Of a stretch of 64,000 nucleotides of DNA, positions 459 through 62,238 are shown one piece after another. Positions within the stretch are counted from its first letter, which is position 1. Each line of letters starts with the position of its first letter. Both the position numbers and the translations under genes were made by a program. Source of the DNA: Octopus sinensis (lineage: Eukaryota); the NCBI RefSeq assembly GCF_006345805.1, contig NW_021832120.1, positions 314,694 to 378,693 on the forward strand, read 5' to 3'. The notes under the pieces were generated by a model. It saw only the letters and a program-made list of their open reading frames with translations, had not been told where the DNA came from and did not search any database.

Positions 459-2748
459 ATGTGTCAAATGACAGAGGAGGACGTGCGCGTTTCATTCCAC
501 GTATCAAAAATCGTTGATAACCTAAATAATGTGGGAAGACTAAAAAGATCTCCGAATGCATTTCATTCACTTATTGTTTCTAATATAAAAATGATTTACG
601 CTCCTTTGAGAATTAAAAAAATTGTAAAGTTAAGTTGTGGATATTATAGTTCTAGAAATCAGCTCATGCTTAAATTTTTCGCTGACGAGGACCGAAGTAA
701 GACTCTTTCTGTCATAATCGTATGTTTTAATTAAAAATAAATTATCACAAGAAAGAAGAAATCAAAATAAAAACAAAATTCAGAATAGACTTCTCGTGGG
801 ATAAACAACTTAGGGAAATATCAAGTAACTTATTCGTTTCACTATTTTCAGTCCGATTTGGATCTGGTATTTGGTCATATTTTGATTTACTTCGAGGATT
901 AATATTTTTGAATTTATTTTCTGGCTTTATTAATCTCATGTTTGTATATATTCCTAACTATTTAATTTATAATGACGACGACCCTTATTTATTTGATTTT
1001 CAAAATCCAACAAAACAATTCGCAACTGCCAAAAACTGCAGTTTAAAATACCGTTTCAAAAATACTCAAGTCAGTCTGATGTGGTCAACTTTAGACATTT
1101 TTCGGTCAATTTTCATATGGATCGTACAAATCAATATATTACAAAAACGGAATGAACTACGACATATCGATAGCATATTTGATATCATTCATCATTTGTT
1201 ATTTCATTACACTAGTGTATCTTATTTACAGGCTAGACTGTGATTCATAACATTTTCAGGTCGAATCTAAATCATAAACATTCCAATATGATCAAATGGG
1301 AAGAAATGTCCCGAAATATATTTTCAGAATACATTTACTGCATTGATTTATCAAATACTGGCTTTAACATGCTGGGACGAACACAATTTGAACTAATTAA
1401 CAAAATTAGAGTTAATTACTAATTGCTTATTTCAGATGCGGCTTGGTAAAATCGAAAAACTTCAAATACAACACAAAAAAACATTGAAAAAAAACGTATT
1501 AATTCACTTGAAGAGATTTTTAATTAATATGTCGATATTTACTATGTTAATAGCATGTGGATATGGAATATACGGAACAATAGAATTATCATCGCGGGTT
1601 TACTCTGCTATTTACAAGTTTAAAGGATAAATATACGCAGAATACATCACATATTAATACTTTTGTTCAATATTCACCTTCTATTCTGATTGCAATGCTC
1701 AATATAATTATTCCTAAATTGATGGAAACGATATCTACCTTTGAAGAATACAGTGCTAAGACTCAAGTCACTCTCACACTGGTCAGGTAAAAAACTTGTC
1801 ATTATTGTAGGTCGATTCTTGTCAAATTGTCGTCTCTAATTCTGGTTGTATATTCACTGTTCATGCTGATCAGATGTGAGCCAAAAAATACATGTTACGT
1901 GAGTATGGGCAAGTGTCATTCAATACCGGTGACAGAAAATGTCAACATTTTTAGTGTTGGGAATCATATTGTGCAGACCAATTTTATAGATTGGCAATCA
2001 CTAGTTTTGCGATGGGAATTTTTGCCGATTTTTGTGTAAATTTTGTCATTAAGTTGTATTCTTATTTTATCCTATAGAACGGTCAGTCATCGTAAATATA
2101 TCAATAAATTGATAAAAGCTCCTAATTTTTCTTTATTTACTTGTGTCCTGGACTTGGTTTACTTACAATCTATTACTTGGTTATTACTTAAGCTGTATTT
2201 TAGGCTGGCTGCTATATTTTCTCCTCTTTTTCCATTACTGATTGGAGTGGGATTTATTATTCTGTTTTATTTAAAATTGGTTTGAAAGTTTTATTTGATT
2301 TAGTTTGGACTATACAAATTCTTATCGATCCAAGAAAAATCCTACACATTCATTCGTACCATCGACTTGTTTTATAAATTGCTATTGTCACAATTCACTA
2401 TTGTGTCTCTACTAGTGTGGTATATTATATTTGAGTAATATTTTTGTTTTTTACTATAGACAGCCAGTTTCTAAATCATGTGGACCCTTTAGACAATATA
2501 CGACGATGCTGGGCACTTTAAAAAAGTCGTTTGACTCAACAAAAATAACACAAATTATCACATCAAAAACATCTGTACTGTTCATAATAATAATTCTTAT
2601 GTATAAATATTGTGTTTTTGTTATTTTTAGAATTATTATCAGTCAACAGAAAAGTAAATTGAAACATGTCACCAAAATTCTAAACAAAGCAAAAAAATCT
2701 CTTAACGCAGAAAGAAACAAAACTGATATAATTAACTCTCCTTTCTGA
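459..2748 (+). CDS. TMC: Transmembrane channel-like (TMC) protein, 14 exons, 648 aa, apparently intact
   Basis: Manual splicing of 13 introns (720-751, 825-851, 1070-1094, 1232-1259 GC-AG, 1411-1435, 1598-1625, 1787-1810, 1929-1954, 2053-2077, 2180-2203, 2280-2303, 2435-2459, 2601-2630) gives one stop-free 1947-nt frame. TMC motifs: RFGSGIWSYFDLLRGLIFLN, FEEY, CWESYCADQFYRL, FSPLFP, SKSCGPF. Subfamily not resolved. Confidence 0.85.
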
Positions 2749-4291: not shown

Positions 4292-5666
4292 TAGTCCGTT
4301 TCACAGATACCCCGAATTGGGGCAGACCCCAGGGGTGGGGCACCCCCGCATTTTGGGGCACTTTTTTTTGGCCAACATTTTGGCAGAGTAAAATGGAAGA
4401 TCGATAAAAAATACGGAAATTTTGGGGCACTATAAAATTGTAGGGAATGAAGTAAATAAAATTATATTTTATTAATAAATACATAATTTAAATTTACACG
4501 TTTACTTACATTTTTTTGTTGTCAGTGGTTATAAACTACGAAACAAACAAAATTAAAGATTGCTAAATTGATATCGAAGAAAAAATTATCTGAAAGACAG
4601 ATAATTCAAAAATATAAAACTAGCAAAGGCATGATTTCACGAATAAAAAAAACAATTGTGCTTTTTCTTGAACAAGGAACTGTAAACACGGATGAAGATC
4701 CTATGCCTTATTGTGAGAAATCGAAATTTGATGATCAAGTTTTTGAAATATTTCAGAAACTACGGGAAGATAAAGTTCCAATATCAGGTCCTTTTATAAA
4801 GAAAATCGCCTTATATACGGCTTCAAAGATTGGATTTGATTTTTTCAAAGCTTCAAACGGCTGGCTTGACAGATTCAAAAAGCGTCATGAACTGAGATTC
4901 AAATCAATTTGTGGAGAGAAAAATTCATCTGACTTAATCAATGAGTTTTTTAAAATCCTTGACGAGAAAATTGCGGAATATGGAAGAGGAAATGTTTTTA
5001 ATTGTGATGAAACAGCGCTTTATATAAAAAGGACACCGAGAAAGTCGTTTGTCGGAATAAATGACGATACTTTTGGCTTTAAACAGGGAAAAGAAAGAGT
5101 CACCGTACTTCTTTGTTGCAATTCTATGGGAGAAAAACTTGAGCCATTGATTGTTGGAAAATTTAAAAACCCTCGATGTCTCAAAAATTCTGCTAATTTC
5201 TAAAAGCTGGGAAAAACTTGATCCGAGTTTAATATTTAATTGTTGGAATCAAATTGAAAAGATTCGTGATTCCGTAAGAATTGAAGATAGGATTACAGAA
5301 GAATTAATCAACAATGCCGTAAACGAAACATTGGATGGGGAAAATGACGAATTCGTCGATGATATTTATAACGAAGGTTTAGAAAACGATAACATGGAAA
5401 CAAGTCTAAGAGAAACGCAAGATTCTCTTGATCAGTTAGAAAAGAACATTTTTCACATATCTCCTGAAATGCTCAAAGAATTTTACGATTTTTGACTTAA
5501 TTTTATGAAAAATGTAAGAAGTAAGAGGAAAACTGGGGATAAATTAACTGATTATTTTTCTAAAATTGATTTTTGATGTTTAAAAATCTCTGTTTTATTA
5601 AACCCCTGTTTTTGTGGCACCCCCGCTTTTTGGGGCACTTGGTTCCCCAATTCGGGGATCGGACTG
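4292..5666 (+). mobile_element. pogo/Tigger (Tc1-mariner) element, internally deleted
   Basis: ORF 4568-5203 has a CENP-B-like HTH (FKASNGWLDRFKKRH) and DDE_1 start (FNCDET); TIR core CCCCGAATTGGGG at both ends; right end followed by TA; left TIR degenerate. Confidence 0.85.
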
Positions 5667-10605: not shown

Positions 10606-11260
10606 ATGAGAAATGCGGTCCGGCAAATGGACGCTGACATTAATTATAAAAAAATGGTTCTAGTAAAATTAACACTTGAAACAATTCAAAAAATTAAGAA
10701 TTTCAGTGAATCCGGACTACTAGATGAATGCATCGACTGGAGGGAAAGGGCAAAAATCAAGCGATATGCCGAAAGTTTCACTTTCAAGAATTCCGCAGCC
10801 TACATTGCTAAAAATGGTCGAGAGTTGCGATTCTTTTGTATCGAGGAAGCTGAATTAAAGCTCAAATACATTGAAGTTTGATATTTCCTGATTTAAATTA
10901 GGCTCAACACAATTTAAACCACTTTGGACGAGATAAATTATATAGTTTATTGTCACTGACGATTTAATCCAGATAGATTTAATCAGTCAATAAAACGATG
11001 GATCTCATCCTCTAGTGAATCGAGAGGAAATTTTGGATGCTAAAAGACGTTGTTCGTGATTACAACAATTCTACTCACGATACAACAAAGCAGAGACCCT
11101 TCGAAATATTTTTCAATGTGGATCTTTCCAAAAAATACGAAAAAGGAAATTGGAAGCACTATTAGATTTGATGTCAAAATGAAGACGCGGAAATCCATTG
11201 GCACCTCGTGCTATTAAAGAAGTCAGCTTTTTTGATATGCACACTGGAGGACCCTCTTAT
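10606..11260 (+). mobile_element. Ginger-like integrase N-terminal remnant with a 26-nt intron
   Basis: Removing GT-AG 10876-10901 joins KYIE to AQHNLNHFGRDKLY (zinc-finger H-x3-H-x-GRDK start); downstream sequence decayed. Confidence 0.55.
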
Positions 11261-11304
11261 TATGGTTTTTGCTTATAATTTATTAGTGGCATCCATTACA
11301 ATCA

Positions 11305-11764
11305 ATGGAATCCAATTTGAAGGTAGCAAACGCCCAGACGGGTTGTCCACCTTCCCATACTAACAGGGGAAATCCCTTATTTGGGATTCTACCTGTTCGG
11401 ACACGTTCTCGCTTGGAAATCTCGCTCTGTCCGGCGCCAATCCTGGGCATGCTTCGAGGCAGGCCGAAGACCGAAAGATTCTCAAGTACGGCCACCTTTC
11501 CAACTCGCTGTTCTTTACTTCAATTGCCGTGGAGTCCTCCGGGATTTTCGGCCCCAAGACACTCCGCTTACTTCGCTCGCTCGGCCGACGGATTTCAAGG
11601 ACTAGCCACGATCCAAGAAAGTATTCTTGGCTCCTGGAACGTCTGTCGATTGCTGTGATCCGAGGGAACGGCTTCGCCATTCGCGAGGCTGGCCGGGTGT
11701 CTCGTAAGGCCTTTAATTAGCTTAGCTATCTTTTCACTTCCTTATTGTTTTGATGTAAAAAAAA
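11305..11764 (+). mobile_element. CRE-like non-LTR retrotransposon, 3' end (restriction-like endonuclease)
   Basis: GSKRPDG...KSLIWDSTCSDT, SIAVESSGIFG, LLERLSIAVIRGN; A-run at ~11757-11764. Confidence 0.8.
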
Positions 11765-11910
11765 TTTGTCCTTAACATTTGAAGGTTGTCGCAGTTAACC
11801 TGTGCAAGTGAATGTGCCCAAATCTTAGAAATAAATGTGCATAGATATTTGAAACACCCCACTTGATAGAGAAACAAACTCTGGAAAAAAATGAATAAAT
11901 AAGGATGGAC

Positions 11911-12057
11911 ACAAAATAATGACGAATAAGTTCAGAATATGTAAGAAGAACAGATTATAGAAATCAATTCAAAAAATGTTACAAAATAATGACAAATAAG
12001 TTCAGAATATGTAAGAAGGACAGATTATAGGAATCAATTCAAAAAATGTTACAAAAT
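11911..12057. repeat. 70-bp tandem duplication (about 2.1 copies)
   Basis: ACAAAATAATGAC...AAAAAATGTT starts at 11911 and 11981 with three mismatches; third partial copy at 12051. Confidence 0.9.
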
Positions 12058-12289
12058 GATGATATTTCGGATAATTTGATCATTAAACGAAACTACATCG
12101 CGAATTATTCCTTCTGAATCCAATTACATGCAAAAATAATAACGACGATATTGTAAAAAAAGCACAACATAAAAATAATCCGTGTACTTCCACGTGGCAC
12201 AATTTATTAGGTTTGCCATGAATAATTAAGATAATTAAACAATAATTAATAAAAAATAAGCTTTATTTTAATTAAAACTATTTTATATT

Positions 12290-12346: not shown

Positions 12347-12725
12347 CCTTAGACGATTTAAATCTTTTATTCATTATGCCGTAAATTTAAGTTTTTTTTT
12401 GCTATTAGAGAGTGATTTTTGTATTTTTGGACAATCTTGTGTATGCTTCGGTGATTGATCACAATACTTTCTATCGGCTCAGGCGATTCTTTTGCAAGAA
12501 GTTATGCCACAACTACATTTTGACCATATAGTAACTAATAGTTACCCAGGGTATCATCAAGCAAAAGAACAAATGGCACATCATGTTATTAAAGAAGCCA
12601 GGTTTATTAAATTATATAATAAACAAAATTAGTCACTGGAGGAATGAGGTAGTCTTATGTAAAATAAATTTATAATAAAATAAATTGAATAAAAACGTTC
12701 TTCAACAATGAAATGACTAATTTTA

Positions 12726-13170
12726 CTAAAATCGACGTCCTCTTCCAAAACTTCGATTTCCACCGAATCCTCCCCTTCCACGTGCACCAGAACCACGACC
12801 TCTTCCTCGACTAGCACCTCAAAGTCCTCCGCGGGGAGCACCTCTGCCGCGTGACGACCCCCTTCCCCGTGAATTACTTTCAGGCTGACTAAAGCGAGAC
12901 ATTGGAAGAAGTTTAGCACAATCAACGTAAAAATTGGTTTGATCTTGAAACGAATCAGGTTTTATTCCATGAGATGTTTTGACTGAGCACATAAAACTAT
13001 CTATGGGACCAAGGACATCATCCAACTACACAATAAAGTCAATAAACAAACGATCAAATTTGCTGCTCATTTTCGTTAAAAATGGGTGCATTAAAGAATG
13101 GAACTTGGTCAAATTCTGAGCAATTAAGAAGCAATAAATCGTCAAAGCTCATTTCTTTCGCTCCCAAATT
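12726..13170 (-). pseudogene. GAR1: GAR1 (H/ACA RNP subunit) pseudogene
   Basis: QVPFFNAPIFNEN, LDDVLGPID, YVDCAKLLPMSRF and an RGG-rich tail; two in-frame TGA stops; one short intron; no N-terminal GAR tract seen. Confidence 0.8.
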
Positions 13171-13826
13171 AATTAATTTTAAAATTGAAATGATTATTCT
13201 TATTAATAATCACGTGATGAATTCATTTAAACGTTAGAGATTTTTACAGTGAACCTATCCCTATCTGGAAATAAAATTCGAATCCAAACTAAATCAATAC
13301 TAAATGAATCAATTAACCAAGTGTGTGTATTGCAGGATTCAAACCCTTCTGGATAAATCTTTATGCATTGTCAGGGCTCTCAATTTGTCCCGATAACTTT
13401 CATTTAACGACCGGAATGAAGAACAACCACATGACCCCTCAAGCACATCAAGCGTTTTTTCATCTTTTGCCTATGACATGCGAAGTCAATCATTCGACAC
13501 ATCATACACTCCTTCATACACTATTTCCGGAATGTTTTGTTCTTCAATTGAGACCATCGCACAATTCCAATCAAGTTCGACTCGGACTGGTGATCCTCTT
13601 CAATAGGTCAAATGCATTGGCCGAGAAGGTATGCACACTGTGCAAAAAGTGGAAGGGAAGTAGTCAAATCATATATTTTTGATTCGGAAGCCAAGATCTA
13701 ATTGATGAGTCGATACAAGTTCGATCCATATTCAGACATTATAAATCCAACTTAGTACCAATTGTGTACCAAGATTCCATATAAATTGGTTAAGAAAGAT
13801 ATTCTGGTTGCTGTGATTTCAAATTA

Positions 13827-15333
13827 CAGTCCGACCCCAAAATGGGCAGACCCCAGGGGTGGGGCACCCTCGGATTTTGGGCACCCCCGCAATTTGGGGC
13901 ACTTTATTCCAAAAGTACATTTTGGCAGAAAAAAATAAAAATCGATAAAAAATTATGGAATTTTTGGGGCACCCTAAAATCATTTATAAGGAATTAAAAA
14001 TAAAATAAAATTATAATAAATTAATTATTTTTTGCGGGATGCCATAAACTTGAAATATTTCAAAGACTACGCGTAGATAAAATTCCGATTTCAGGCCCTA
14101 TTTTGAAAAAAATTGCCTTAGTTACAGCTTCAAAAATTGGATTTACTTCTTTTAAAGCTTCCAATGGGTGGCTTGATAGATTTAAATTGCGGCATGAACT
14201 TCAATTCAAGTCAATATGTGGTGAAAAAGCTTCATGTGATTTATCTTATGTGAAAAATTATTTTGAAAAATATGACCAGAAAGTATTAAATATGGACCTG
14301 AGAATATATTTAATTGTGATGAAACTGCGCTTTTTATAAAAAGAACTCCTCAAAAATCATTTGTTGAACAAGGCGAACCGTGTTTGGTTTAAACAGGGAA
14401 AGAAAGACTCACTGTTCTTCTATGCTGCAGTTTAATCGGGGAAAAACTTAATCCATTGATTATTGGAAATATAAAAAACCTCGGTGTCTAAAAAATTTTG
14501 ATGTTCAAGATTTTGGGTTATTGTATTCATCTTCTCAAAATGCATGGATGACTGGAAAGACTTTTATGAGTTGGCTTACACTTATAAATGAATCGTTTTG
14601 CAAAAACAACAGAAAAATATTATTAATACTTGACAATGCGGGATGCCATAAAACTGCCGAATGTTCGAACATCGAATTTTTATTTTTGCCGAAAAATACA
14701 ACGCCCTATTTACAACCTTTGGATATGGGAATAATCAAGATTTTTAAAGATTATTATTCCTCTTTCTTAATGGAATTTTTATGTTTTCAAGATTTCGAAA
14801 ACGATTTTACACATTCTATTGGTAAATTAAATTTGCGTCAGGTTATGATGCTAATTTCAAAAGGATGGGAGAAAATAGATGCTAAAAGTATTGTTAATTG
14901 TTGGAAGAAAATCGACAGGAACCGTGATTCTTATGCAACAAAAAACTGTCTAACAGATGAACATTTAGATCAAGTTGTTAACGAAACAATTGATGGAGAA
15001 TGCGAAGACATGAACAATAATGTTTATGATACATATTCAGAAACCGAAAATAGTGAAAATGTCGTAGCAAAAACAAAAGATCTGCTTAACAATTTAGAAG
15101 AAAAAATTTCTAATGTTGCACCAAGTATGCTCCGAGATTTTTTTGATTTTCGGCGGAAATTGACGAACAATATCAGACAAAACTCTACAAATAAAAAGAA
15201 AATAACTGAATATTTTAGTAAAAATGTTTTTTGATGTTTATTAATGGTTTAATTTTTAAAAAAATAACAAACCCTGTTTTTGGGGCACCCCCGCATTTTG
15301 GGGCACTTGGTGCCCCATTTGGGGGTCGGACTG
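13827..15333 (+). mobile_element. pogo/Tigger element with both TIRs and TA target duplication, 5'-deleted transposase
   Basis: TA|CAGTCCGACCCC ... GGGGTCGGACTG|TA; AWMT, LLILDNAGCH, LQPLDMGIIK motifs; same family as 4292-5666. Confidence 0.92.
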
Positions 15334-33250: not shown

Positions 33251-33671
33251 GAGGTAAGTCACCACCTCAACCAAAAAAATAAATAAATACGATTTCTATT
33301 TTTCTATTTATTTTGAACAAAAATCATTTATTTCATAGAAATCTGATTTAAATCAAAACAATCCTGTTTAATCAAAAAATGTATAAAAAAAATTTAACAA
33401 CCCTGATTTTAAGAATCTTCTAGCCAAAGCACATTTCAAGCAAATGCCTCTACTTCCATTAGAATATACACCCCTAAACGGAGAAATAAGTAACAAAAGG
33501 GACTTATTCGGTCACATTTTGAAATGGACAAGAAAAATCTCACGATTTAAGGTCCCAGACGATTTAAGGTCCTGAGAAAGCTTTCAAGAAACAGAAAGAA
33601 TTGGAAACAATCGATAAAACCAGGAATATTTTTAAGGAACAAAACCCAAAAAACAGAAAATGACAAATAAA

Positions 33672-35450
33672 CTAAGAGATAGCAATTGGACTGGTCTCAT
33701 TCCTGAGCCAATCAATCAAATAAGCAGGCTTATTTTGTCGTTTTAATTCATTTCCAACAACCTCAAATACCCGCTGATGATACTCATTAATCCATTCAAT
33801 CTATAATATAAACATCACTCAATAAACCTCACCTAAACACAACATTTCCACTAAAATCAACTTTTTCTGAATAGGGAAAAGAGTTATTGTTTTAAACTGA
33901 CAAAATCCTTCAAAATCCGACTGGATTACTTTCACTAAACTCTCAATTCTGATCCCCAACAACCCATCCTCGAAGTACCCAGGCTCTACCATAGAAATTC
34001 AACAAAAACCATTGCTGAGAATCATTCCAGGGACTAATGGAATGTCATCTACTCGACTCCTGAGAGATATCCCCATCGGTCCTACAGATAACTAACCGTG
34101 GACTAACCTTCATAAACATTGAGACAACATCCAACTCCGTGACCAGTCCCATGTTGATAATCCCGCCCTTTATTCCACAAAAACTGCCTTGCCAGTGTAT
34201 CCAGTCTATTTCCTGGAATGTCAGACTAGACTAAACAACCAGTTGTCTTTGGTGGAAAAATAGCTCTTGCTAAAGCTATATGGCCACGGAGGACTCTTGT
34301 GAACATTTCCCTCTCATATTCAGTCGGAGATCCAAAATGGACAGTCCTCGTGACATCTGTGGTCCCTTCCCTGCATATTCAAATGTAACAACATACAAAT
34401 ATTGTCCCCCAGAGTCACATAAATATAATAAACCTACAGCTAAAATCACGTGATATACCCTCTTAGATCATTCACCAGACACTAGCCTTATATTCATCGA
34501 CCTCCTCTCCTTCAATAACTCTCTTTTCCAGCAAATAAAAAAGCTCAGTAAGAGCCACTGCATCTTTAAGATAGGCTAATTTCATTCCAGCTAATTCCGT
34601 TGGGTTCTTCACTGCCTTCAATCTACTTAGTCTGGTGATTTGGCGTATCGATTTCTTTGACACAAAAATAACTGCTCTTTTTAGGAATCTCCATTTTTAT
34701 CAAAAAAGAAACACCCAGCATAATTCTTGGGGACAAATCAGAGACCGAAGACGCGGAAATGTGTTACTGTATTTTTCCAAAGTAATTTTTTGAGAAGAAA
34801 AATATCCTCCGTTGACTTGAGAAATTCCAAGATGTCTCAAAACCGCAGAATCAACACGTGATTTGTCGTGGATAAAGAGAAATACCTCTTTTTTGGGTAA
34901 TGATTACATAAGATAGAAACACTGGATTGTAATTTATTTCAGATCCCCTTAAATTGAGCAACCCTTTAATAAGAAATGACCACTAACAGGCAATCTCGTC
35001 CAAGGGAGTCACCAAATGTACAGAAACTCTTTCGGCTTTCATATTTTCTCGGACTTTTTCGACCTTCTCTTCCCAGGAAAGTCCCGTAAATTTGATTTCG
35101 AGTGGAAAAATCCTTGATTTGGGCACTGCTGGTCTTTCCTTCCAAATTTTATCCACCAAATTGTCCTGAACTGCAATAAAACCAAGTTTTTTTCTTTCCA
35201 ATCTTGCTGAAAGTGACTCCCACTGGTCTAAAATATAAAATAACTAAAACTACTGAAATCTAGAAGGGCTGGATCTATATAACGAAAATTCGGTTAGAAT
35301 CAATTAGTCTTAACAATGTTTAAGAGTGAATCAAAATTGCGTAAAACCCCTACTTATTCGAGTAACTACAAGCCAATTTGTTGCCATTTCAAGGGTTATT
35401 GTTAAAGAGCTATTTGGTTATCAATTGTCACTGTGCTTCAGATTAAAATT
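33672..35450 (-). pseudogene. XPNPEP1: Xaa-Pro aminopeptidase 1 pseudogene
   Basis: [67 protein letters not shown]; at least seven 24-28 nt introns; frameshifts, stops and a missing ~40-aa block. Confidence 0.88.
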
Positions 35451-35804
35451 CGATAATAACAAAATTTTACTTCAAAATATTATTTCTGCTGGTTAAGTAA
35501 AAGAAATTGATTTTAACGTGTCAACATTGCTAGGATAGATTCTCAAAACTCATCCCATTATTATTTATCTCAAAAAAATGAAGAAAGCTAAAATTGGATT
35601 TTGACAAATAATAAAATTATCGGACAGTAATTTTTTCCAGTAAATATTGCAACTAAGCGCATCTAATTGGACTATTAGAAACGAATGTTTGGCAATTGTA
35701 TGTTTTCTAATGCTTTAAATAATGTAATGCTTTAAATTGCGTATTATTTAATAAAATAATTTTGAGAATGTCTATACGATGGTCGAGGTCGATATACCGG
35801 GAAA

Positions 35805-38800
35805 TTATTATTATTAGCACTGTCATAGGAACATAATGTAATTTAAACTAATTAAGTTCCCACATGTGCCACATATGAGACTATCTTTTCGGTCATAATT
35901 TTCCATGATGTGCGGTTGTATGCTATACTCCTGAGAGTATCTAGGTCGTCTCCATTTTTCAGTTGTCTTTTAACGCGTTGTAGTTCTTTTGAGATTACAA
36001 TAGGTAATGTATTTCGTGGGCGTCCTCGGGACGCAGATCTTTCGTCCTTTGCGTAATATGATTCCATTGCCCAGTTAGCATAGACATCCTGGTCGAGTCT
36101 TAGAATGTGGCCCAATAGGCGCCAACGTGCTTCGGTAATGTCCACACTGACGGGTCTGCTGTTGCAGATATTGTATAGGGTGGAGTTCTTGATTTTCTTT
36201 GGCCAGTTGATGCCAATAAGAATTCTTAACTGTCTTCTATGGAATGCATCAAGAGATTTTGATTCAGACTCAGATATTCCCCATGTTCCTCCGTTGTACA
36301 AAAGTATGGGTTTAATAAAAGCATTGTATAATTTGGCACGTAAGGCCGTTCCAACCTCGCGGTTTCGTAGCCAAGTGGTCCGCAGTTTGTTAAGTGCAAC
36401 AGTCGATAGCATCTTTCTCCTCATAATGTCTTCACTATCTCCTAAAAGAGTTCCAACTTTTTTCGAGTTTCGCCATTTTTCGTCTGTCCTATTTGCCTTT
36501 TTCGGTTGAGTTAGTGACGCAACTCTATTGCACAAAGTCTTAATCACATATGAGGCTACAAAGAGATTTTACTTTGCTATCATTCAATGTCAGAGGACTA
36601 TCTGACCTATCCAAGCGAAAAATCCTATGCCGGGATCTGAATGCATATGGTGCAACTATCGGATGCTTTCAAGAAACGAAGGTCAAAGGCGGGCTAGATG
36701 AGATACACAACGAGTATCGAATCATTCTCCTTCCATCAGAATCACGTCATTATGGGCAGGGGTTTGGCATTCATAAGACCTTTTGGAATTCAATTCACAA
36801 ATACTACCGTGTGAACGACCGCATATGTGTACTACAACTGAGACAAAAAACTTTGACCAACACGGATCGAATAATCAGCATTATAAATGTCTACGCCCCA
36901 CAAAGTGGAAGACTGAAGAAGAACGTGGATGAACTAGACTCTTTCTATCACATGCTATCAAAGACCTACACGAGTATAAAAACATCCTTCCTTATACTAA
37001 TTGCCGGTGATTGGAATGCTAAGGCAGGCAAAGGCCGTGGTGAAGAAGTGTTCATGGGCAGACATGGACGGGGGATAAGAAATGCACCAGGTGAAATGCT
37101 TGTGAACTTCTGCAGCATATTCAAGCTACTGCTATGCAATACGGTCTTTCCTCATGCGGCACGTCATAAAACCACGTGGACCGGACTAGAAGAAACAAAA
37201 ATGGGGAGTACGTCAACATCTATAATCAAATCGATTATATCATCTGTAGACAAGAAGAAAAACATCGATTGCTGGATGCCAGGTCATATGGCGGGGCACT
37301 TACACTGAGCGATCACAAAGTCATTGTGGCACGATTGAGACTGAAAAGAATTTTTGGATCGCCTCTTTCAAAAGAAAATGAATCAAACCGAATTAGATAC
37401 TCAGTGGAAAAACTGATTACATCAGATGTTACCAAGGAAAAATACTCCCAGGCAATCATCGAAAACCTAAAAGTAACAGAAACGGTAAAAGACCCAAACA
37501 AAAGCTGGGATATATTAGAAAAACTTATTCACAAAGCTGCAACGGAAACCATTGGAACGACTGCATTCAGAAACCACTCAAACCCATTGAATCCAAATGT
37601 TGCCGAAATGGCAACAAAACAAAAAGCCATCCAACTGAAAATTGAAAACACCAACGACAAGGAGGCAAAGGAAAAACTCAAAAGAGAACGTAGGAAAATA
37701 TCGAGAACAATCAAGAAGGAAAATCTTAAATACGTGAAAGCTTTATTAAACTCTCGAATATCAGAAGTTGAAGACTTAAAGGATGGTGCGCAAATGTACG
37801 CAGCCATCAGACTACTACGCCGACGACAACAGAAAACAAAACTGGTTGTGCACGATGAACATGGGAAAACAATTGGAAACCCAATCGAAATGGTAAATAC
37901 AATCGCCGACCACTTCGAAATACTATTCAATGGCAGGGCCGATGCTCTCGATGAGGGTGAAGAACGTTATCTAAACAACAAAATAACACACCTTGAAGTT
38001 TTGAAGGCTATAAAAAAATTAAAAAACAACCGTGCGGCGGGTCCAGACAACATCAACGGTGAATTGATAAAGTACTCCCCAATGGAGATCTCAACTATAA
38101 TCACAAATCTCCTGAACGAGATGTTCCATGGAAATACCATACCGCCTATTGGGAAAGGAACGCTAATTCCTCTCCAAAAACCCAACAAGCCGCAAGGTCC
38201 TCTTAACAACATTCGCCCAATCATACTCTTGAACACAATAAGGAAAATCTTCTCACTCGTAACACTGGAACGTATTAAGGACCCTGTTAATGAATATCTG
38301 TCGGCTAGCCAAAGTGGATTCAGGCCTGGGCGATCAACTGCAGATGTAGTATGGGGACATAGATGGATCTGTGCCATATCTCAGAAATTTAAAATGGCGA
38401 CCACAATATTGGGCATTGATATGAGCAGGGCATTTGATACAATCCGCAGAGACAAGCTAATGGAGATCCTCAAAACCATTCTTGACAATGACTCGATCAG
38501 AATGGTTCGAGCACTACTTATAGACACCGAGTTAACGGTGAAGATCGGACCCGTACAATCAAGATCTTTCAAAACAAGCATTGGAACGCCCCAAGGTGAT
38601 TCAATATCACCTGTACTATTCATTGTCTATCTTGAAGCGGCACTAAGAGATCTGAGAAAACTAGTGAAGACTACTTCAATAACTGAAGTGATATATGCCG
38701 ACGATGTAGACTTTTTGTCTCATGATAAGTCGACACTCGAAGAACTGCTGAACATTGCTCCTCATGCACTGGAAAAATGGTTCTTAAAAGTGAACATAGA

Positions 38801-38823
38801 AAAAACCGAATATGTAACAATCA
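35805..38823. mobile_element. Near-full-length RTE-clade LINE with inverted 5' segment (APE+RT on + 36510-38823; C-terminus and tail on - 36509-35805)
   Basis: APE SFNVRGL/FQET/GDWNA/QIDY/SDH; RT GTPQGDSISP, YADD; (TAA)4 tail at 35805-35816; flanking ATACCGG(G/A)AAA at 35794-35804 and 38824-38834; one frameshift near 37180. Confidence 0.92.
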
Positions 38824-39699
38824 ATACCGGAAAATAAATAAATAAAAATAATTTGTGTTAAATTTTTTTTACTTATTTAAATTGTTGGAGACTGGAACAA
38901 GCAAAGCTTCAAATGGAAATTATTGGACAGCATAGGAGGACTCATTATAAGAATATATTAGTGATTTCTGCAACATGAAACCTCTATGCTTGTAAATATG
39001 ATATTTAAGCAAAGAGCTAAGACACGACAACATAAACCGGCAAAGAATCAAAATAGAATATCAGTTTATGTACTCGTATTCCATTTTTGGTAAATAAAGG
39101 ACCTTAAAACTCCTTCGCCAAATGGGCCGGTTATTCTTTTATTTTTTAATTGAGAATTTAATTTAAAATATTTTGACAAGATATATTTGTTTCTAAAAGT
39201 CAGAATCCTGGATAATTTTAAATTTTATTTGTAATTTGAAAGTTTGATTTTACTCATATTGAAGTGGAATGTTTTGGGATGTATTTAACCAATCTCCCTT
39301 TTACATAAATGTCTTTTTTTACTTTCAGCCTACTTTCTTTTGGCTCCCTAAATGATAACATACGTGTAATCGGTGGTTTCTTTCTTCATTCTCCTAGCTT
39401 TAAAAAAGTACTCAACATATAATTTTTTAATCCTTTTACTTCCAACCAAAATGTAGGTCATCAAATGTATAGTTTTCATAAAGAATATACTATATTACAT
39501 TCATTTGAAGAAGCGTTTCAATTTTGTAGTTCATTATGTCCTCATTATCTTTTCCGCTTTATATCTTACATTCCCTCAATATTATCAGCTCCATAAGCTG
39601 ATTTGACCTACAAATTAATTTTGACAATCCAACTCCATGTGTTATGGCCACTCTCATGTCAAAACAATTGTCACATGTGTACCATACAATTATTATCAG

Positions 39700-42909: not shown

Positions 42910-43924
42910 ATGAATGTATTAATTAGAATATCCATGGATATAAAAATGACTCGTTCATCTGTGCATGTTTTACTCTCGGGAAACAGACTGCCCATTCCTC
43001 TCGCACAGCAAATTGTGTACAATATTGCCAAAGGAAGGGCATTCGGGTACTCAACAGACGTCTCAATCACATTATATCAACTCAAAGGAGACGATTCTGC
43101 TCTTGAAAAACTAGCGAAAGACTTGAAGGAATGTTGCCTTCCTCTTTTGAAAGATGTGAAGATGTGGAAACAAGAAATAAGTCCTGACTACACAGTCGTC
43201 TATCTCGACAAAACAGAACACGTAGTGGAATTAGTGAATATTGCTAAAGAAGTGGGGAAATGGAAAAGTGGATCAAAAGTAGTTTGATTGATAAATGAGG
43301 TGGTGATTTTTGGTCGAGGAAATGTGTGCCTTCTGGCCTCCCTTTTGCGAGATGTGGCTATTTTTAACGGAGTAGAACCTGCACTGAAAGACAAGTTTTA
43401 TAGTACAGCAGTCACTGCTCACTTGCAAAATTATGTTGTCGCCTGTGTAGCACGACATTGCGGCATTTTGCCTGGGGAAGTAAAACATTCGGTGGTGTGG
43501 GGATCAGAAAATCCAATTCCTGACTTGTCCTATGAAACGAACTCAAAAATTGATGACAATTGGAAAATATTTACAATTAAGAATGTTATATCTTTTTCTT
43601 ATTTTATAGAAACTGACGAAAAAAATATTTCGAGAAACCGACCTGGCATTTGCCCTGTGTCGTCACCTTCTCTATTTGACTACTCCACCTGATTGCACTG
43701 TAAGCGAATCAGAGACTGATTGGATTATGATGGGAGTCCCCTCAGGTGGTGCCTATGGGCTTGCCCCTACACTTGTTTTTGGACTTCCAATGGTCAAACG
43801 TGGCAGTTTGAGGCAACTCACTGATTTGACTCCTGACGAGTTTATGAGTGAAAAGATTTTACTTGCTGCCAAATCTGAACAAGAAAATGTTGAATTAGCG
43901 AATAAATACATGTCGCAATTATAG
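42910..43924 (+). CDS. Cytosolic malate dehydrogenase (MDH1)-fold protein lacking catalytic motifs (MDH1B-like), 3 exons, 322 aa
   Basis: Exons 42910-43278, 43300-43584, 43610-43924 (introns 21 and 25 nt) give a stop-free frame; ECCLPLLKDV, VKHSVVWG, MGVPSGGAYG, FMSEKILLAAK align with MDH1. Confidence 0.8.
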
Positions 43925-44199
43925 TTTGCTCTAATAAAATGATTATTCACCGTTCAAACTTGTAGTCGAAAGATTTATTTTTGCCAATGAACATACGGCT
44001 AAATTCTAGGAATGAATTCCTTTTCTTATAACTTTGTAATTTGTCACAATAAAATCAACTGGAAAAATATAATTTGCCAAAAAATAAAAATTAAGAATGA
44101 CTCACGCTCTCCTATACGAGACTATTCCTAGATATAATTATTATATTTCCTTTTATGTAATGGTTAAGATCACATTATATAAATTGTATTGATTAAAAA

Positions 44200-44271
44200 G
44201 CCCAAGTAGCTCAGTGGGAGAGCGTTAGACTGAAGATCTAAAGGTCGTTGGTTCAATTCCGACCTTGGGCA
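44200..44271 (+). tRNA. tRNA-Phe: tRNA-Phe (anticodon GAA)
   Basis: Complete cloverleaf: acceptor GCCCAAG/CTTGGGC, D GCTC/GAGC, anticodon stem TTAGA/TCTAA with loop CTGAAGA, T stem GTTGG/CCGAC with TTCAATT; TTTT just downstream. Confidence 0.97.
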
Positions 44272-59859: not shown

Positions 59860-60190
59860 AATTGCTCTGTTTAAGTTGATTCTGTACTTAAAAGAAGTCA
59901 AAATGAGTCCGAATATATTTCCTAGTCCAACTTTTATAGATAATTCCCAATTCACTGCTAACAGATCATATTTATGCATTTTTTCAACTTTGAACTCTTT
60001 CAAGCGGCTTTCCGAAGTTATTCTTATCTCGTTAAGCGCGATCTTATACGAGTTGTCCAAATGGCTCAATTGCCTTGCTGAGGAAGAATCTTTCCTGCAT
60101 TGTTTTTTCGTTTTACAATACATGCTCCCATCAACTTGGACAACTTTGCCAATTCCACTTATACAATCTAATAATACCAGTGTGTTCAGA
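59860..60190 (-). mobile_element. R4/Dong-like RLE fragment
   Basis: QYCKTKKQC, EIRITSESRLKEFKVEKMHKYDLLA. Confidence 0.7.
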
Positions 60191-60194
60191 AAAT

Positions 60195-60620
60195 TAACTA
60201 AATAATCAGCAAAAACCTCACACTGGGAGTAAGACTAATTAAAAATCCTGTAATTACCCATTCCAATTGCCGCCGACACCATAAAATTGTGTGTCTGTTA
60301 AAGCTCCACATATACATAAAACGAATACATGATTGTAAGAAAACTGTCGTGGCTGCGAGCCACTTACCTAAAAATAAAGTACTCTATTATTATACTGTTT
60401 CTAAGAGAAGTATAAGTTCGGCACTCGCTTTTATCGCACACTCATGTTGTATTCTCCCGCTGATAGAAAATGGTCATCAAATGTTTTTTAAGGCACTTCT
60501 TTTCTTTCACAAAGATTCCAATCTCTTGAATAAATGGAACTAACTCTATTTCAGAACGTGAATATTCGTAGTCCTTCAGCTTTAATATTTTGCATAACAA
60601 CTGTATCACTTATCCTTACA
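60195..60620 (-). mobile_element. Second, degenerate Merlin transposase (N-terminal part) with 28-nt intron
   Basis: PFIQEIGIF...KCLKKHLM...VCDKSECR...SLRN|SKWL...MYMWSFNRHT aligns to the intact Merlin; intron 60368-60395. Confidence 0.65.
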
Positions 60621-60834
60621 ACAACAAAGGCACCGCAAAACCAAAGGCCTGGAAGTTACTGAGGTTTCGTTTGCACCAGCAACACAAAGAGAACTTTTAA
60701 TGAAAGATCAAAGAAGTTAATTATTCTAACTAATCCGGAATATTCGAGTTGAAACTGAATTGCTAAATACTGGAATTTAAAAATGGAAATATAGCATTTT
60801 TTATGTTTGAGGAAGTGATATTGTTTGAAAAAAA

Positions 60835-62238
60835 GGTACTTTTGTCGAAGTGGTCGCAGTTTTTTTAGAAGATAATTAAAATTAATTAATTTTTTTAGTG
60901 AAAAATAGATTATTTAATTTATAACCCTCTATCAATAATTTAAATGGTTATTAAAATTATTTAAAAATTTATTTAACCAATTTAGTCATTTTAGTACGCG
61001 GCATCCAAATTCCAGGACTGTAGAAGGAATTTATGTCTTTTACAATCTGTGCAAAAGATTCCTTATAGTTCTGTATTTGTTTTCGCCACATAAATTCTGA
61101 AAAAATAACTAACTAAAAAAACCTGCGAAATAAGATCCCAGATGATGTCTTACAGCTCCTCTTTGAGCTTTATTCTTGCATTTTGCACTTCCCCACATTC
61201 GTTCTACTGTCTGGGTGTGCACTCCCGTCGTTGGATCCACAAAGAATTTTCTGAATATATTATATTTCCTTACTTATGGTTAACGGTTTCGTGTGTGTAG
61301 CCGTTTTCAACCAATTGATCAGTTGAATACCCTAAATGTTAATCAAATAATGCTAACCTTTCCAGCAGTCACTATAAATAATGCTTCCCACCTCGACATA
61401 TCGAATTACTAGACTGAGCAGTGTTTCTCTGCTCCTATCCGCGACTGGTTGCAGAAAACACTGTTTGGTGGCTCGACAAATACCACCGAAGACCCACTGT
61501 TTTGGTAAAACTCTTCCAGAGTTGTTTTTCCGTTTGGAAAACATACTCTCGTCTACCTCCACAATCATACCAGGACCACCTGAAATAAACATTAATAATA
61601 CCAATTTTGCCGTCAGATCTTTTAACAAGTGCGTCCACACAGACTTCACGTAAAAACATAGCCCAATCGACATATGTATGTTCACCCCAATTGTATTCGT
61701 GATGAAGCCATTTGAAGGTATGCCTATCGTAACTCCATAAGTATATGTAGGCGATGACATCCTCAAATGGCAATCTACAATTCTCTAACCAGGTATCTAG
61801 AATTATTTGAGAGAAATTATACCTTTTTTAATAGAACATTGGACTCTACAACCAACTCTTGAGCATTTCCAATTGAGCTTCGGTCCCAAGACTAATTCCA
61901 TCTGATGTCCCTTCGGACATATACGTGATTTTGAAAGGATATCCACATTTTGCAGAAAATGCACTGCATCCTCCTTACTTATTGGGAGCTGTCGGAATTT
62001 GATGTTGCATAAGTCCACAACAGAATTTTCCATGTGACCTATAGTGCCAGTTTATATCAATATTAGGTACATGCTCGCCATAATATTAAAAAAATTAGAA
62101 AATAAATTAGTAAAAAATTTAATAATATTTTAAATTATTGATAGAGCGACTTAAATAAAATATAATATATTCCACCTCAAAAATTATTAGATTTTTTAAA
62201 AGGCCTAAAAAAACTGCGACCACTTCGACAAAAGTAAA
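60835..62238 (-). mobile_element. Merlin (IS1595/ISXO2-like) DNA transposon
   Basis: Perfect 32-bp inverted repeat 60837-60868 / 62205-62236 plus a shared subterminal CTCTATCAATAATTTAAA; no TSD recognised. Confidence 0.92.
60969..62033 (-). CDS. Merlin transposase, 6 exons, 313 aa, intact DDE
   Basis: Exons 62033-61823, 61796-61602, 61579-61358, 61331-61274, 61250-61123, 61096-60969 total 942 nt with no internal stop; VEVDES, SDCWKGY, VNH, HTQTVERMWG, SYFAEFMWR. Confidence 0.9.

What the first reader, a model, noticed from the sequence alone, without database searches (positions are those of the whole stretch)
60835..62238. Potentially active Merlin transposon whose transposase is split by five host-type micro-introns
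Seen: GT-AG introns of 26 (61797-61822), 22 (61580-61601), 26 (61332-61357), 23 (61251-61273) and 26 nt (61097-61122). Removing them gives an exact 942-nt, 313-aa frame with the DDE triad (VDES, SDCW, VERMW), within perfect 32-bp TIRs. Four of the five are not multiples of three, and the splices restore conserved motifs such as IGGPG, WKGY and YFAEFMWR. Established: Merlin is related to intronless bacterial IS1595. Inference: five introns in ~1.06 kb means this transposase depends on an unusual short-intron spliceosome, which could restrict horizontal transfer, allow splicing-based (e.g. germline) control, and hide the element from ORF-based annotation.
Basis: partly seen in the sequence, partly recalled or inferred. 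Interest (0 to 1): 0.86.

Follow-up and report, generated by a model that had tools for sequence, protein, structure and literature searches.

The report
Merlin transposon with five micro-introns
A 1.4-kb Merlin "cut-and-paste" transposon carries an intact transposase gene split by five real introns of only 22-26 bases, the same intron type as its host's own genes (most likely a dicyemid, a tiny parasite of octopus kidneys), and a second Merlin family has introns at the same five places.

Summary
On the minus strand of 60835-62238, removing the five GT..AG segments at the stated coordinates (26, 22, 26, 23, 26 nt) gives a 313-aa DDE_Tnp_IS1595 transposase. It aligns without gaps across all five junctions to intronless Merlins of nematodes and arthropods, and it keeps 31 of 31 highly conserved residues.

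New evidence: a second, decayed Merlin family has micro-introns at the same five positions and phases, plus a sixth. One fragment lies at about 60050-60640 in the window, and a fuller copy lies in a contig labelled Octopus sinensis. So these are old, conserved spliceosomal introns, not decay.

"Host-type" holds. Cellular genes in the window (aminopeptidase P-like, TMC-like) also need 21-28-nt introns.

The window's repeats match contigs labelled O. sinensis at 77-99.9%, and those contigs also carry micro-intron genes. The DNA is therefore most likely from a dicyemid, the octopus renal parasite known for introns of about 27 nt.

Corrections:
- All five intron lengths, not four, are non-multiples of three.
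- The perfect 32-bp TIR is 60837-60868 / 62205-62236.
- One terminus lacks the family's GG, and there is no target-site duplication, so this copy's own mobility is doubtful.

Verdict: a new variant of a known kind, of moderate interest.

The parts
60835..62238 (-). Whole Merlin-A element, 1404 bp, with the transposase gene on the minus strand
   Evidence: Bounded by inverted repeats. The ends were set by comparison with relatives that start GGTACTT and end AAGTACC.
60835..60868 (.). Terminal inverted repeat at the 3' end of the gene. It reads GGTACTTTTGTCGAAGTGGTCGCAGTTTTTTTAG, with the canonical terminal GG present.
   Evidence: The GGTACTT terminus is shared with S. ratti (L005), L001 and L006.
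62205..62238 (.). Terminal inverted repeat at the 5' end of the gene. Positions 62205-62236 are perfectly complementary to 60837-60868. The last two bases, 62237-62238, are AA where CC is expected.
60878..60974 (.). Subterminal inverted repeat, left arm. It is 97 nt and 72% complementary to 62099-62195.
   Evidence: (I1).
62099..62195 (.). Subterminal inverted repeat, right arm
   Evidence: (I1).
61823..62033 (-). Exon 1, 211 nt, ATG at 62033-62031. It encodes a Cys/His-rich N-terminal region (C39, H43, W55, C57, C62).
   Evidence: The N-terminus MENSVV resembles the Merlin-B start MNDTVV.
61797..61822 (-). Intron 1, 26 nt, phase 1: GTATAATTTCTCTCAAATAATTCTAG
   Evidence: Merlin-B has a 25-nt intron at the same position and phase, 28 nt in the window fragment.
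61602..61796 (-). Exon 2, 195 nt
61580..61601 (-). Intron 2, 22 nt, phase 1: GTATTATTAATGTTTATTTCAG, splitting KIG|GPG
   Evidence: Merlin-B has a 21-nt intron at the same position.
61358..61579 (-). Exon 3, 222 nt. It holds catalytic D145 (VDES) and D206 (SDCW).
61332..61357 (-). Intron 3, 26 nt, phase 1: GTTAGCATTATTTGATTAACATTTAG, splitting WKG|YS
   Evidence: Merlin-B has a 27-nt intron at the same position.
61274..61331 (-). Exon 4, 58 nt
61251..61273 (-). Intron 4, 23 nt, phase 2: GTAAGGAAATATAATATATTCAG, splitting NHK|KFFVDP
   Evidence: Merlin-B has a 16-nt GT..AG segment in the same phase, at the same distance before VDP.
61123..61250 (-). Exon 5, 128 nt. It holds catalytic E245 (VERMW) and K252.
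61097..61122 (-). Intron 5, 26 nt, phase 1: GTTTTTTTAGTTAGTTATTTTTTCAG, splitting YFAE|FMW
   Evidence: Merlin-B has a 28-nt intron at the same position.
60969..61096 (-). Exon 6, 128 nt, with the TAA stop at 60971-60969. An AATAAA hexamer at 60973-60968 overlaps the stop.
   Evidence: A polyadenylation role for the hexamer is inferred only.
60050..60640 (-). Decayed, truncated fragment of a second Merlin family (Merlin-B). It covers the N-terminal half only and lies about 200 nt from Merlin-A. It keeps intron 1 (28 nt) and a damaged intron 2.

Best explanation
This is a copy of an autonomous-type Merlin (IS1595-like) DNA transposon. It sits in the genome of an animal whose spliceosome routinely removes introns of about 20-30 nt. 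That animal is most probably a dicyemid mesozoan, the renal parasite of Octopus sinensis.

The transposase gene has six exons and five spliceosomal micro-introns. A functional 313-aa DDE transposase can be made only if all five are removed. Because the element moves as DNA, the introns travel with it.

The introns are not recent accidents. A second Merlin family about 45% identical in protein carries introns at the same five positions and phases. The five were therefore already present in the common ancestor of the two families. The nearest relatives in nematodes and arthropods have none.

Shown: the gene structure, homology, conserved catalytic residues, conserved intron positions, and host genes with the same type of intron.

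Inferred: that the introns are actually spliced, that the protein is active, that the host is a dicyemid, and that the introns were gained in this Merlin lineage rather than lost everywhere else.

This particular copy may be unable to move. One terminus lacks the conserved GG and no target-site duplication is visible.
For: Gene structure:
- The Pfam DDE_Tnp_IS1595 domain hits the spliced product at E=5e-19.
- Ninety homologues were found, the best at about 50% identity and 91-94% coverage. All are 290-300-aa Merlin transposases.
- The alignment is gap-free across all five junctions.
- The profile hits change frame exactly at the five segments.
- Every intron is a non-multiple of three, and retaining any one gives a stop codon. 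Intron GC is 21% against 41% in exons.
- The protein matches 31 of 31 columns that are at least 90% conserved among 63 homologues.

A second family with the same introns:
- Merlin-B in L011 has GT..AG segments of 25, 21, 27, 16 and 28 nt at the same five positions and phases, plus a sixth of 27 nt.
- Removing them and patching two frameshifts gives a collinear transposase that also hits PF12762.
- A and B are sisters in a neighbour-joining tree, with 84 of 100 bootstraps.

Relatives without introns:
- The genes of N. lugens (843 nt for 280 aa) and S. ratti (828 nt for 275 aa) are single exons.
- L001 and L006 are single ORFs.

Host introns:
- The Creatinase_N_2 domain of an aminopeptidase-P-like gene at 33.5-35.2 kb is complete (profile 1-161) only after 22-24-nt GT..AG segments are removed. 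One example is DEIA|24 nt with a stop|WLLNLRG.
- A TMC-domain gene at 0.7-2.7 kb also needs micro-introns.

Literature:
- Among animals, introns under 30 nt are known only in dicyemids and myxobolid myxozoans, with the 5' splice signal reduced to GTa (PMC13644364).
- Dicyemid median intron length is 27 bp (PMC6543705).
- D. japonicum was isolated from O. sinensis. It has 6.2 introns per 1155-nt mean CDS, 49% repeats and 36.7% GC (PMC6736024).
- The Merlin gene has 5 introns in 942 nt, or 5.3 per kb. The host figure works out at 5.4 per kb.
Against: - No transcript evidence is available here, so splicing is inferred from sequence only.
- Only one full copy lies in the window, and no near-identical copy or protein was found in any searchable collection.
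- There is no TSD, and the terminus at 62237-62238 reads AA instead of CC. Relatives L005 and L006 have perfect 8-bp TSDs and GG/CC ends.
- The host assignment conflicts with a database label. The window's LINE is 99.7-99.9% identical to contigs deposited as Octopus sinensis.
- The A+B sister grouping could be partly long-branch attraction. Raw A-B identity (45%) is lower than the identity of A to some intronless Merlins (50-51%).
Confidence: 0.85

Rival explanations
1. The window is genuine octopus DNA, and the micro-intron Merlin reached the octopus germ line by horizontal transfer from its dicyemid parasite. In octopus the 22-26-nt introns could not be spliced, so the element would have been inactive from the moment it arrived.
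For: - The LINE at 35804-38824 is 99.7-99.9% identical to three contigs of GCA_006345805.1, labelled O. sinensis. Other repeats match those contigs at 77-97%.
- The element is a single copy without a TSD.
Against: - The same window holds conserved cellular genes (aminopeptidase P-like, TMC-like) with micro-introns.
- The 'octopus' contigs themselves carry micro-intron genes: a formin FH2 gene packed into about 1.4 kb in L010 and Merlin-B with six micro-introns in L011.
- It is more economical to suppose that all of this DNA is dicyemid.
Confidence: 0.06
2. The gene is a domesticated, host-co-opted Merlin transposase that has acquired ordinary host gene architecture, rather than a mobile element.
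For: - Intron density equals the host average (PMC6736024).
- The ORF is intact and all conserved residues are kept.
- There is no TSD and one terminus is imperfect.
- Intron-bearing Tc1-like genes of bivalves have been read as domesticated (bioRxiv 10.1101/656579).
Against: - A perfect 32-bp TIR and 97-nt subterminal inverted repeats closely flank the gene.
- The termini match those of mobile relatives.
- Sister family B, with the same introns, is decayed and exists in at least two copies at different loci that are 77-86% identical. That is how a transposon behaves.
Confidence: 0.07
3. The five segments are not introns but chance insertions in a decaying pseudogene.
For: No RNA evidence is available. 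A permissive scan for GT..AG-bounded segments produces many spurious 'spliced ORFs' in this window.
Against: - All five inserts relative to intronless homologues start with GT and end with AG. My rough estimate of the chance of that is below 1e-9.
- All five lie within 22-26 nt and are AT-rich.
- They sit at exactly the positions and phases where an independent family also has GT..AG inserts of different length and sequence.
- The rest of the ORF carries no lesion.
Confidence: 0.01

Closest known systems
Merlin superfamily of eukaryotic DNA transposons (Feschotte 2004, as summarised in PMC8101967). The nearest sequenced members are the ISXO2-like elements of Strongyloides ratti, Panagrellus, Nilaparvata lugens and spiders.
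   Same: - The DDE_Tnp_IS1595 catalytic domain, with no Zn_Tnp_IS1595 domain.
- A transposase of about 300 aa in an element of 1.0-1.4 kb.
- TIRs that begin GGTACTT, as in S. ratti, L001 and L006.
- 45-51% protein identity.
   Different: - The relatives examined are single-exon, whereas this one has five 22-26-nt introns.
- This copy lacks the 8-bp TSD that L005 and L006 show.
- It has TT instead of GG at its 5' terminus.
Bacterial IS1595 / IS1016 insertion sequences
   Same: The same DDE transposase fold family (PF12762), TIRs with terminal GG, and 8-bp TSDs as the family rule (PMC8101967).
   Different: They are prokaryotic and intronless, and they are only distant in sequence.
Merlin-B, the second family found here (L011 about 12360-13329, and window about 60050-60640)
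   Same: All five intron positions and phases are shared. It is the sister of Merlin-A in the tree (84% bootstrap). It comes from the same genome, or at least one sharing this repeat library.
   Different: - About 45% protein identity.
- One extra intron, inside VER|MW.
- Different intron lengths: 25, 21, 27, 16 and 28 nt.
- Decayed by frameshifts and truncation.
Drosophila P element (own knowledge)
   Same: Production of the transposase depends on removal of introns, so splicing can gate activity.
   Different: It belongs to a different superfamily, has normal-sized introns, and its tissue-specific intron retention is demonstrated experimentally. Nothing of that kind has been shown here.
TLEWI, Tc1-like elements with introns in bivalves (bioRxiv 10.1101/656579)
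   Same: A DDE transposase gene that carries spliceosomal introns.
   Different: TLEWI lack TIRs, are low-copy, and are interpreted as domesticated. This element has perfect TIRs and a decaying multi-copy sister family.

Membership tests
Merlin superfamily | Transposase with the DDE_Tnp_IS1595 (PF12762) domain | tested here: met
   E=5.2e-19 at 69 bits against a cut-off of 27, over residues 150-276.
Merlin superfamily | Conserved DDE catalytic triad within the three Merlin blocks | tested here: met
   D145 and D206 are invariant. E245 lies in VERMW and is followed by K252. The protein matches 31 of 31 columns that are at least 90% conserved.
Merlin superfamily | No N-terminal Zn_Tnp_IS1595 domain (distinguishes Merlin and IS1016 from other IS1595 groups) | tested here: met
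   PF12762 is the only Pfam hit at E<=0.01. The criterion comes from PMC8101967.
Merlin superfamily | Terminal inverted repeats with a conserved terminal 5'-GG | tested here: inconclusive
   There is a perfect 32-bp TIR. The GG is present at 60835-60836, but the other end reads TT on the element strand (AA at 62237-62238). Relatives have GGTACTT at both ends.
Merlin superfamily | 8- or 9-bp target-site duplication | tested here: not met
   The flanks are GAAAAAAA / TTTATTCT, or AAAAAAGG / AATTTATT with the inner ends. Neither pair matches. Relatives L005 and L006 have perfect 8-bp TSDs. This is a property of the individual copy, not of the family.
Merlin superfamily | Multiple dispersed copies or evidence of transposition | not testable with these tools
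   The source genome cannot be searched. No second family-A copy was found in the window, in the fetched loci or in metagenomes.
Spliceosomal (U2-type GT-AG) introns | GT..AG boundaries whose removal restores a reading frame collinear with intronless homologues | tested here: met
Spliceosomal (U2-type GT-AG) introns | Position and phase conserved in a diverged paralogous lineage, while intron sequence and length drift | tested here: met
   Five of five positions are shared with Merlin-B.
Spliceosomal (U2-type GT-AG) introns | Removal from transcripts | not testable with these tools
   No RNA data are available.
Dicyemid (micro-intron animal) genome as host | Conserved cellular genes interrupted by introns of about 20-30 nt | tested here: met
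   The aminopeptidase-P-like and TMC-like genes in the window and the formin FH2 gene in L010. Literature: PMC13644364, PMC6543705.
Dicyemid (micro-intron animal) genome as host | Sequence identity to a dicyemid reference genome | not testable with these tools
   No dicyemid assembly can be searched here. The link is indirect: repeats are shared with contigs deposited under O. sinensis, the host species from which D. japonicum was isolated (PMC6736024). Myxobolid myxozoans are the only other animals known to have such introns.

The most novel reading that the evidence does not exclude
A Merlin lineage gained five to six spliceosomal introns after it settled in the dicyemid lineage. It reached the same intron density as host genes (about 5.3 per kb) and kept those introns through the split into at least two families. 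If so, a mobile element has taken on the host's gene architecture. Possible reasons are that expression in this genome needs introns, or that introns shield the transcript from silencing of intronless 'non-self' RNA. As a by-product, the 22-26-nt introns would confine the element to hosts whose spliceosome can remove them.
Probability: 0.3. Interest if true: 0.65.

Novelty: new variant of a known kind. Interest (0 to 1): 0.5.

Why it matters
Introns shorter than 30 nt were long thought absent from animals. They are now known only in dicyemids and myxobolid myxozoans.

This transposon matters for four reasons.

- **A compact test object.** Its intronless relatives give an exact expectation for each splice junction, so it is a natural, self-contained test of how such introns are recognised. 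A genomic construct and a cDNA construct should differ in activity in any cell that cannot splice them.
- **Introns in a mobile element.** Five positions are shared by two families that are only 45% identical, while the outside relatives have none. Introns can therefore be fixed and kept for a long time in a mobile element, at host-like density. That bears on how and why introns are gained.
- **Annotation.** ORF-based and standard eukaryotic gene finders will miss such elements.
- **Assembly hygiene.** The analysis suggests that contigs deposited under Octopus sinensis, including one of 854 kb, are dicyemid DNA. This affects anyone who uses that assembly.

Tried and rejected
1. **Exact look-ups of two LINE ORFs**. 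Neither is on record.
2. **Homology search with the spliced orphan ORF at 42910-43925**. No hit. My first guess that it was a malate dehydrogenase is not supported by Pfam.
3. **Metagenome scan with the Merlin protein**. It returned only one distant relative at 47% identity, and no second copy.
4. **Cluster look-up of the best homologues**. It gave no names or accessions, so it said nothing about their source organisms.
5. **A dynamic-programming scan that chains ORFs across any GT..AG segment of 20-30 nt**. It is far too permissive. It produces many spurious chains and picked the wrong intron 2. I used it only to nominate regions, which were then tested by homology.
6. **A myxozoan host.** I considered this first because of PMC13644364 and the abundance of Merlin in Thelohanellus and Myxobolus (PMC8101967; bioRxiv 10.1101/2024.02.09.579586). 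I dropped it once the repeats matched contigs deposited under O. sinensis.
7. **An octopus host with parasite-to-host transfer.** I considered this next and largely rejected it, because cellular genes in the window and in the 'octopus' contigs also have micro-introns.
8. **Micro-introns in the two pogo/Tc5-like elements**. Their frame breaks are simple indels or an internal deletion. No introns are seen in ORF stretches of 660-780 nt.
9. **A TSD or insertion site from comparing the Merlin-B upstream regions**. There is no homology upstream of the start codon.
10. **Literature on intron-containing Merlins or dicyemid transposons**. Nothing relevant was found. The Merlin survey PMC8101967 never uses the word intron.
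Full report
**1. The observation**

The gene lies on the minus strand. Removing them joins six exons of 211, 195, 222, 58, 128 and 128 nt. The result is a 942-nt CDS from the ATG at 62033-62031 to the TAA at 60971-60969. It encodes 313 aa.

The product hits Pfam DDE_Tnp_IS1595 at E=5e-19 and no other family. A 23-nt core of the terminal repeat occurs exactly twice in the window, against zero expected.

There are three corrections.
- None of the five lengths is a multiple of three. Their sum, 123, is a multiple of three, which is why the first and last exons share a frame.
- The perfect 32-bp repeat is 60837-60868 / 62205-62236.
- No target-site duplication is present.

**2. Are they introns?**

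Three independent lines say yes.

*(a) Homology.* Ninety relatives were found. The best are about 50% identical over 91-94% of the length, and all are Merlin transposases of about 290-300 aa. In an alignment with 14 of them, the spliced protein crosses all five junctions without a gap, through conserved motifs: KK|DTW, KIG|GPG, WKG|YS, NHK|KFFVDP and YFAE|FMW. A profile of the homologues, run against the three raw frames, gives six hits in alternating frames whose profile coordinates abut at the five segments.

*(b) Consequence of retention.* Retaining any single segment gives a premature stop. The segments are 21% GC against 41% in the exons.

*(c) Conservation in a second family.* A contig fetched for another reason (L011) holds a second Merlin, which I call Merlin-B. 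After removal of six GT..AG segments of 25, 21, 27, 16, 27 and 28 nt, and after two frameshifts are patched, it reads as a collinear transposase. Five of those six segments sit at the same codon position and phase as introns 1-5 of the window element. Their lengths and sequences differ from ours. The sixth splits VER|MW, which is uninterrupted in the window element.

A truncated Merlin-B fragment lies in the window itself at about 60050-60640. It is 77-86% identical to the L011 copy and still carries intron 1.

A and B are about 45% identical in protein. They are sisters among 65 Merlins in a neighbour-joining tree, with 84 of 100 bootstraps on a 36-taxon subset. Long-branch attraction cannot be excluded, but the shared intron positions point the same way.

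ORF restoration alone would not have been enough. A permissive scan that chains ORFs across GT..AG segments finds many spurious 'spliced ORFs' and chose a wrong intron 2.

**3. Relatives lack introns**

The annotated genes of Nilaparvata lugens (843 nt for 280 aa) and Strongyloides ratti (828 nt for 275 aa) are single exons. L001 and L006 are single ORFs within complete elements. L001 is probably from a nematode, because it carries TTAGGC repeats. The many hits on contigs of about 1 kb also appear to be uninterrupted ORFs, since each protein nearly fills its contig (checked for L002, L007 and L008).

These relatives fix the family's termini as GGTACTT...AAGTACC, with perfect 8-bp TSDs in L005 and L006. 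By that standard the window element's true ends are 60835 and 62238. But the end upstream of the gene reads TT where GG is expected (AA on the plus strand), and the flanks do not match.

The encoded transposase looks fully intact. It matches 31 of 31 columns that are at least 90% conserved among 63 homologues, against 26 of 31 for Merlin-B. Whether this copy can itself be mobilised is doubtful.

**4. What is the host?**

Most of the window is transposon debris.
- LINE reverse-transcriptase and endonuclease ORFs.
- Two pogo/Tc5-like elements.

It also holds cellular genes that make sense only with micro-introns.
- An aminopeptidase-P-like gene at 33.5-35.2 kb on the minus strand. Its Creatinase_N_2 domain is complete (profile 1-161) only after 22-24-nt GT..AG segments are removed. 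One example is DEIA|GTTAGTGGTCATTTCTTATTAAAG|WLLNLRG. It also has a 27-nt intron inside Peptidase_M24_C.
- A TMC-domain gene at 0.7-2.7 kb.
- An orphan ORF at 42910-43925 that needs introns of 21 and 25 nt. It has no detectable homologue.

So 'host-type' is right.

According to PMC13644364, animals with introns under 30 nt are dicyemids and myxobolid myxozoans only, with the 5' splice signal reduced to GTa. The median in Dicyema is 27 bp (PMC6543705).

A search with a LINE ORF then gave a 100%-identical hit labelled Octopus sinensis. At the DNA level that LINE is 99.7-99.9% identical to three contigs of GCA_006345805.1. Four other stretches of the window match the same contigs at 77-97%. A spread of identities across several repeat families is what two loci of one genome look like.

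Those 'octopus' contigs also carry micro-intron genes.
- Merlin-B in L011.
- A formin gene in L010, from an 854-kb contig, whose FH2 domain (profile 5-86 and 192-338) is packed into about 1.4 kb.

D. japonicum lives in the renal sac of O. sinensis. Its genome is 67.5 Mb, 36.7% GC and 49% repeats, with 6.2 introns per 1155-nt mean CDS (PMC6736024).

The simplest reading is that the window and these contigs are dicyemid DNA, whatever label they carry. I cannot verify this against a dicyemid assembly.

The alternative is that the DNA is true octopus DNA holding parasite-derived insertions. That would require cellular genes with unspliceable introns in octopus. I rate it at about 6%.

**5. How it most likely works**

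The element is a cut-and-paste Merlin. Its transposase pre-mRNA must lose five micro-introns to encode the DDE enzyme (inferred). Because transposition goes through DNA, the introns are copied with the element and can persist through family diversification, as the A/B comparison shows.

Intron density is 5 per 942 nt, or 5.3 per kb. Dividing the published D. japonicum figures gives about 5.4 per kb. The mean exon length of 157 nt is close to the published 198 nt.

The outside relatives are intronless, so the parsimonious history is gain of five introns in the A+B ancestor. The sixth was then either gained in B or lost in A. This history is inferred.

Not every DNA transposon here has introns. 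The pogo-like ORFs run 660-780 nt without interruption.

The following ideas are reasonable but untested:
- the micro-introns limit transfer to other hosts;
- they allow splicing-based control;
- they protect against silencing.

**6. Comparison with what is known, and novelty**

The element is a member of the Merlin superfamily by transposase domain, catalytic residues, TIR sequence and size. This copy fails the TSD criterion and is ambiguous on the terminal GG.

I found no report of intron-bearing Merlins or of dicyemid transposons. The broad Merlin survey does not mention introns at all.

Introns in transposase genes are ordinary in other superfamilies, for example P and Ac (own knowledge). 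It is expected that a resident element would carry its host's type of intron. The new points are the conserved five-intron architecture across two Merlin families, the contrast with intronless relatives, and the extreme intron size.

I class it as a new variant of a known kind, with interest about 0.5.

**7. Limits**

- There is no RNA evidence.
- There is no access to the source genome for copy number, TSDs or polymorphism.
- The host identity is inferred.
- The tree is a simple neighbour-joining analysis.

Noticed in passing
L009, L010, L011 (GCA_006345805.1 contigs VCDQ01008487.1, VCDQ01000570.1, VCDQ01006421.1): These contigs are deposited as Octopus sinensis. They share several repeat families with the window at 77-99.9% identity, and they carry micro-intron genes: a compact formin FH2 gene at L010 17.4-19.3 kb and Merlin-B in L011. 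They look like dicyemid parasite DNA inside the octopus assembly, including a contig of 854 kb.
   Followed up: partly
L011:12360-13329 (minus strand): A decayed Merlin-B copy with six micro-introns of 25, 21, 27, 16, 27 and 28 nt. It has two frameshifts and a truncated 3' end. It may have inserted into a Tc1-like gene at a GGTACTGTTGC terminus near 13494. An IMPDH/CBS-like sequence lies directly downstream at 11092-12108.
   Followed up: partly
window 33548-35243 (minus strand): An aminopeptidase-P (XPNPEP1)-like gene with Creatinase_N_2, Peptidase_M24 and Peptidase_M24_C domains, interrupted by many 21-27-nt GT..AG introns. No Creatinase_N domain was detected. The full exon structure was not worked out.
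   Followed up: partly
window 731-2747 (plus strand): A TMC-domain (transmembrane channel-like) gene that can be read only after removing about eight micro-introns. The intron set came from a permissive scan and has not been verified one by one.
   Followed up: partly
window 42910-43925 (plus strand): A 322-aa ORF obtained by removing a 21-nt intron (43279-43299, in frame and containing a TGA) and a 25-nt intron (43585-43609). It has no homologue in 5.8 billion proteins and no Pfam domain. It may be a fast-evolving orphan gene.
   Followed up: yes
window 35804-38824: A young LINE copy whose 3' part (35804-36498) is inverted and placed directly upstream of the 5' part (36499-38824), relative to the collinear copies in L009-L011. 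This resembles a twin-priming inversion.
   Followed up: no
window 4535-5495 and 14025-15233 (plus strand): Two pogo/Tc5-like DNA transposon copies with HTH_Tnp_Tc5 and DDE_1 domains. One is internally deleted and the other is frameshifted. Neither shows micro-introns in its long ORF stretches, in contrast with the Merlins.
   Followed up: partly
window 44200-44271 (plus strand): A single tRNA-Phe (GAA) gene, the only Rfam or ARAGORN hit in the window.
   Followed up: no
L001:1470-1530: The closest complete intronless relative, from ENA ERZ27259939, carries TTAGGC-type telomere-like repeats inside the element. That suggests a nematode source.
   Followed up: no
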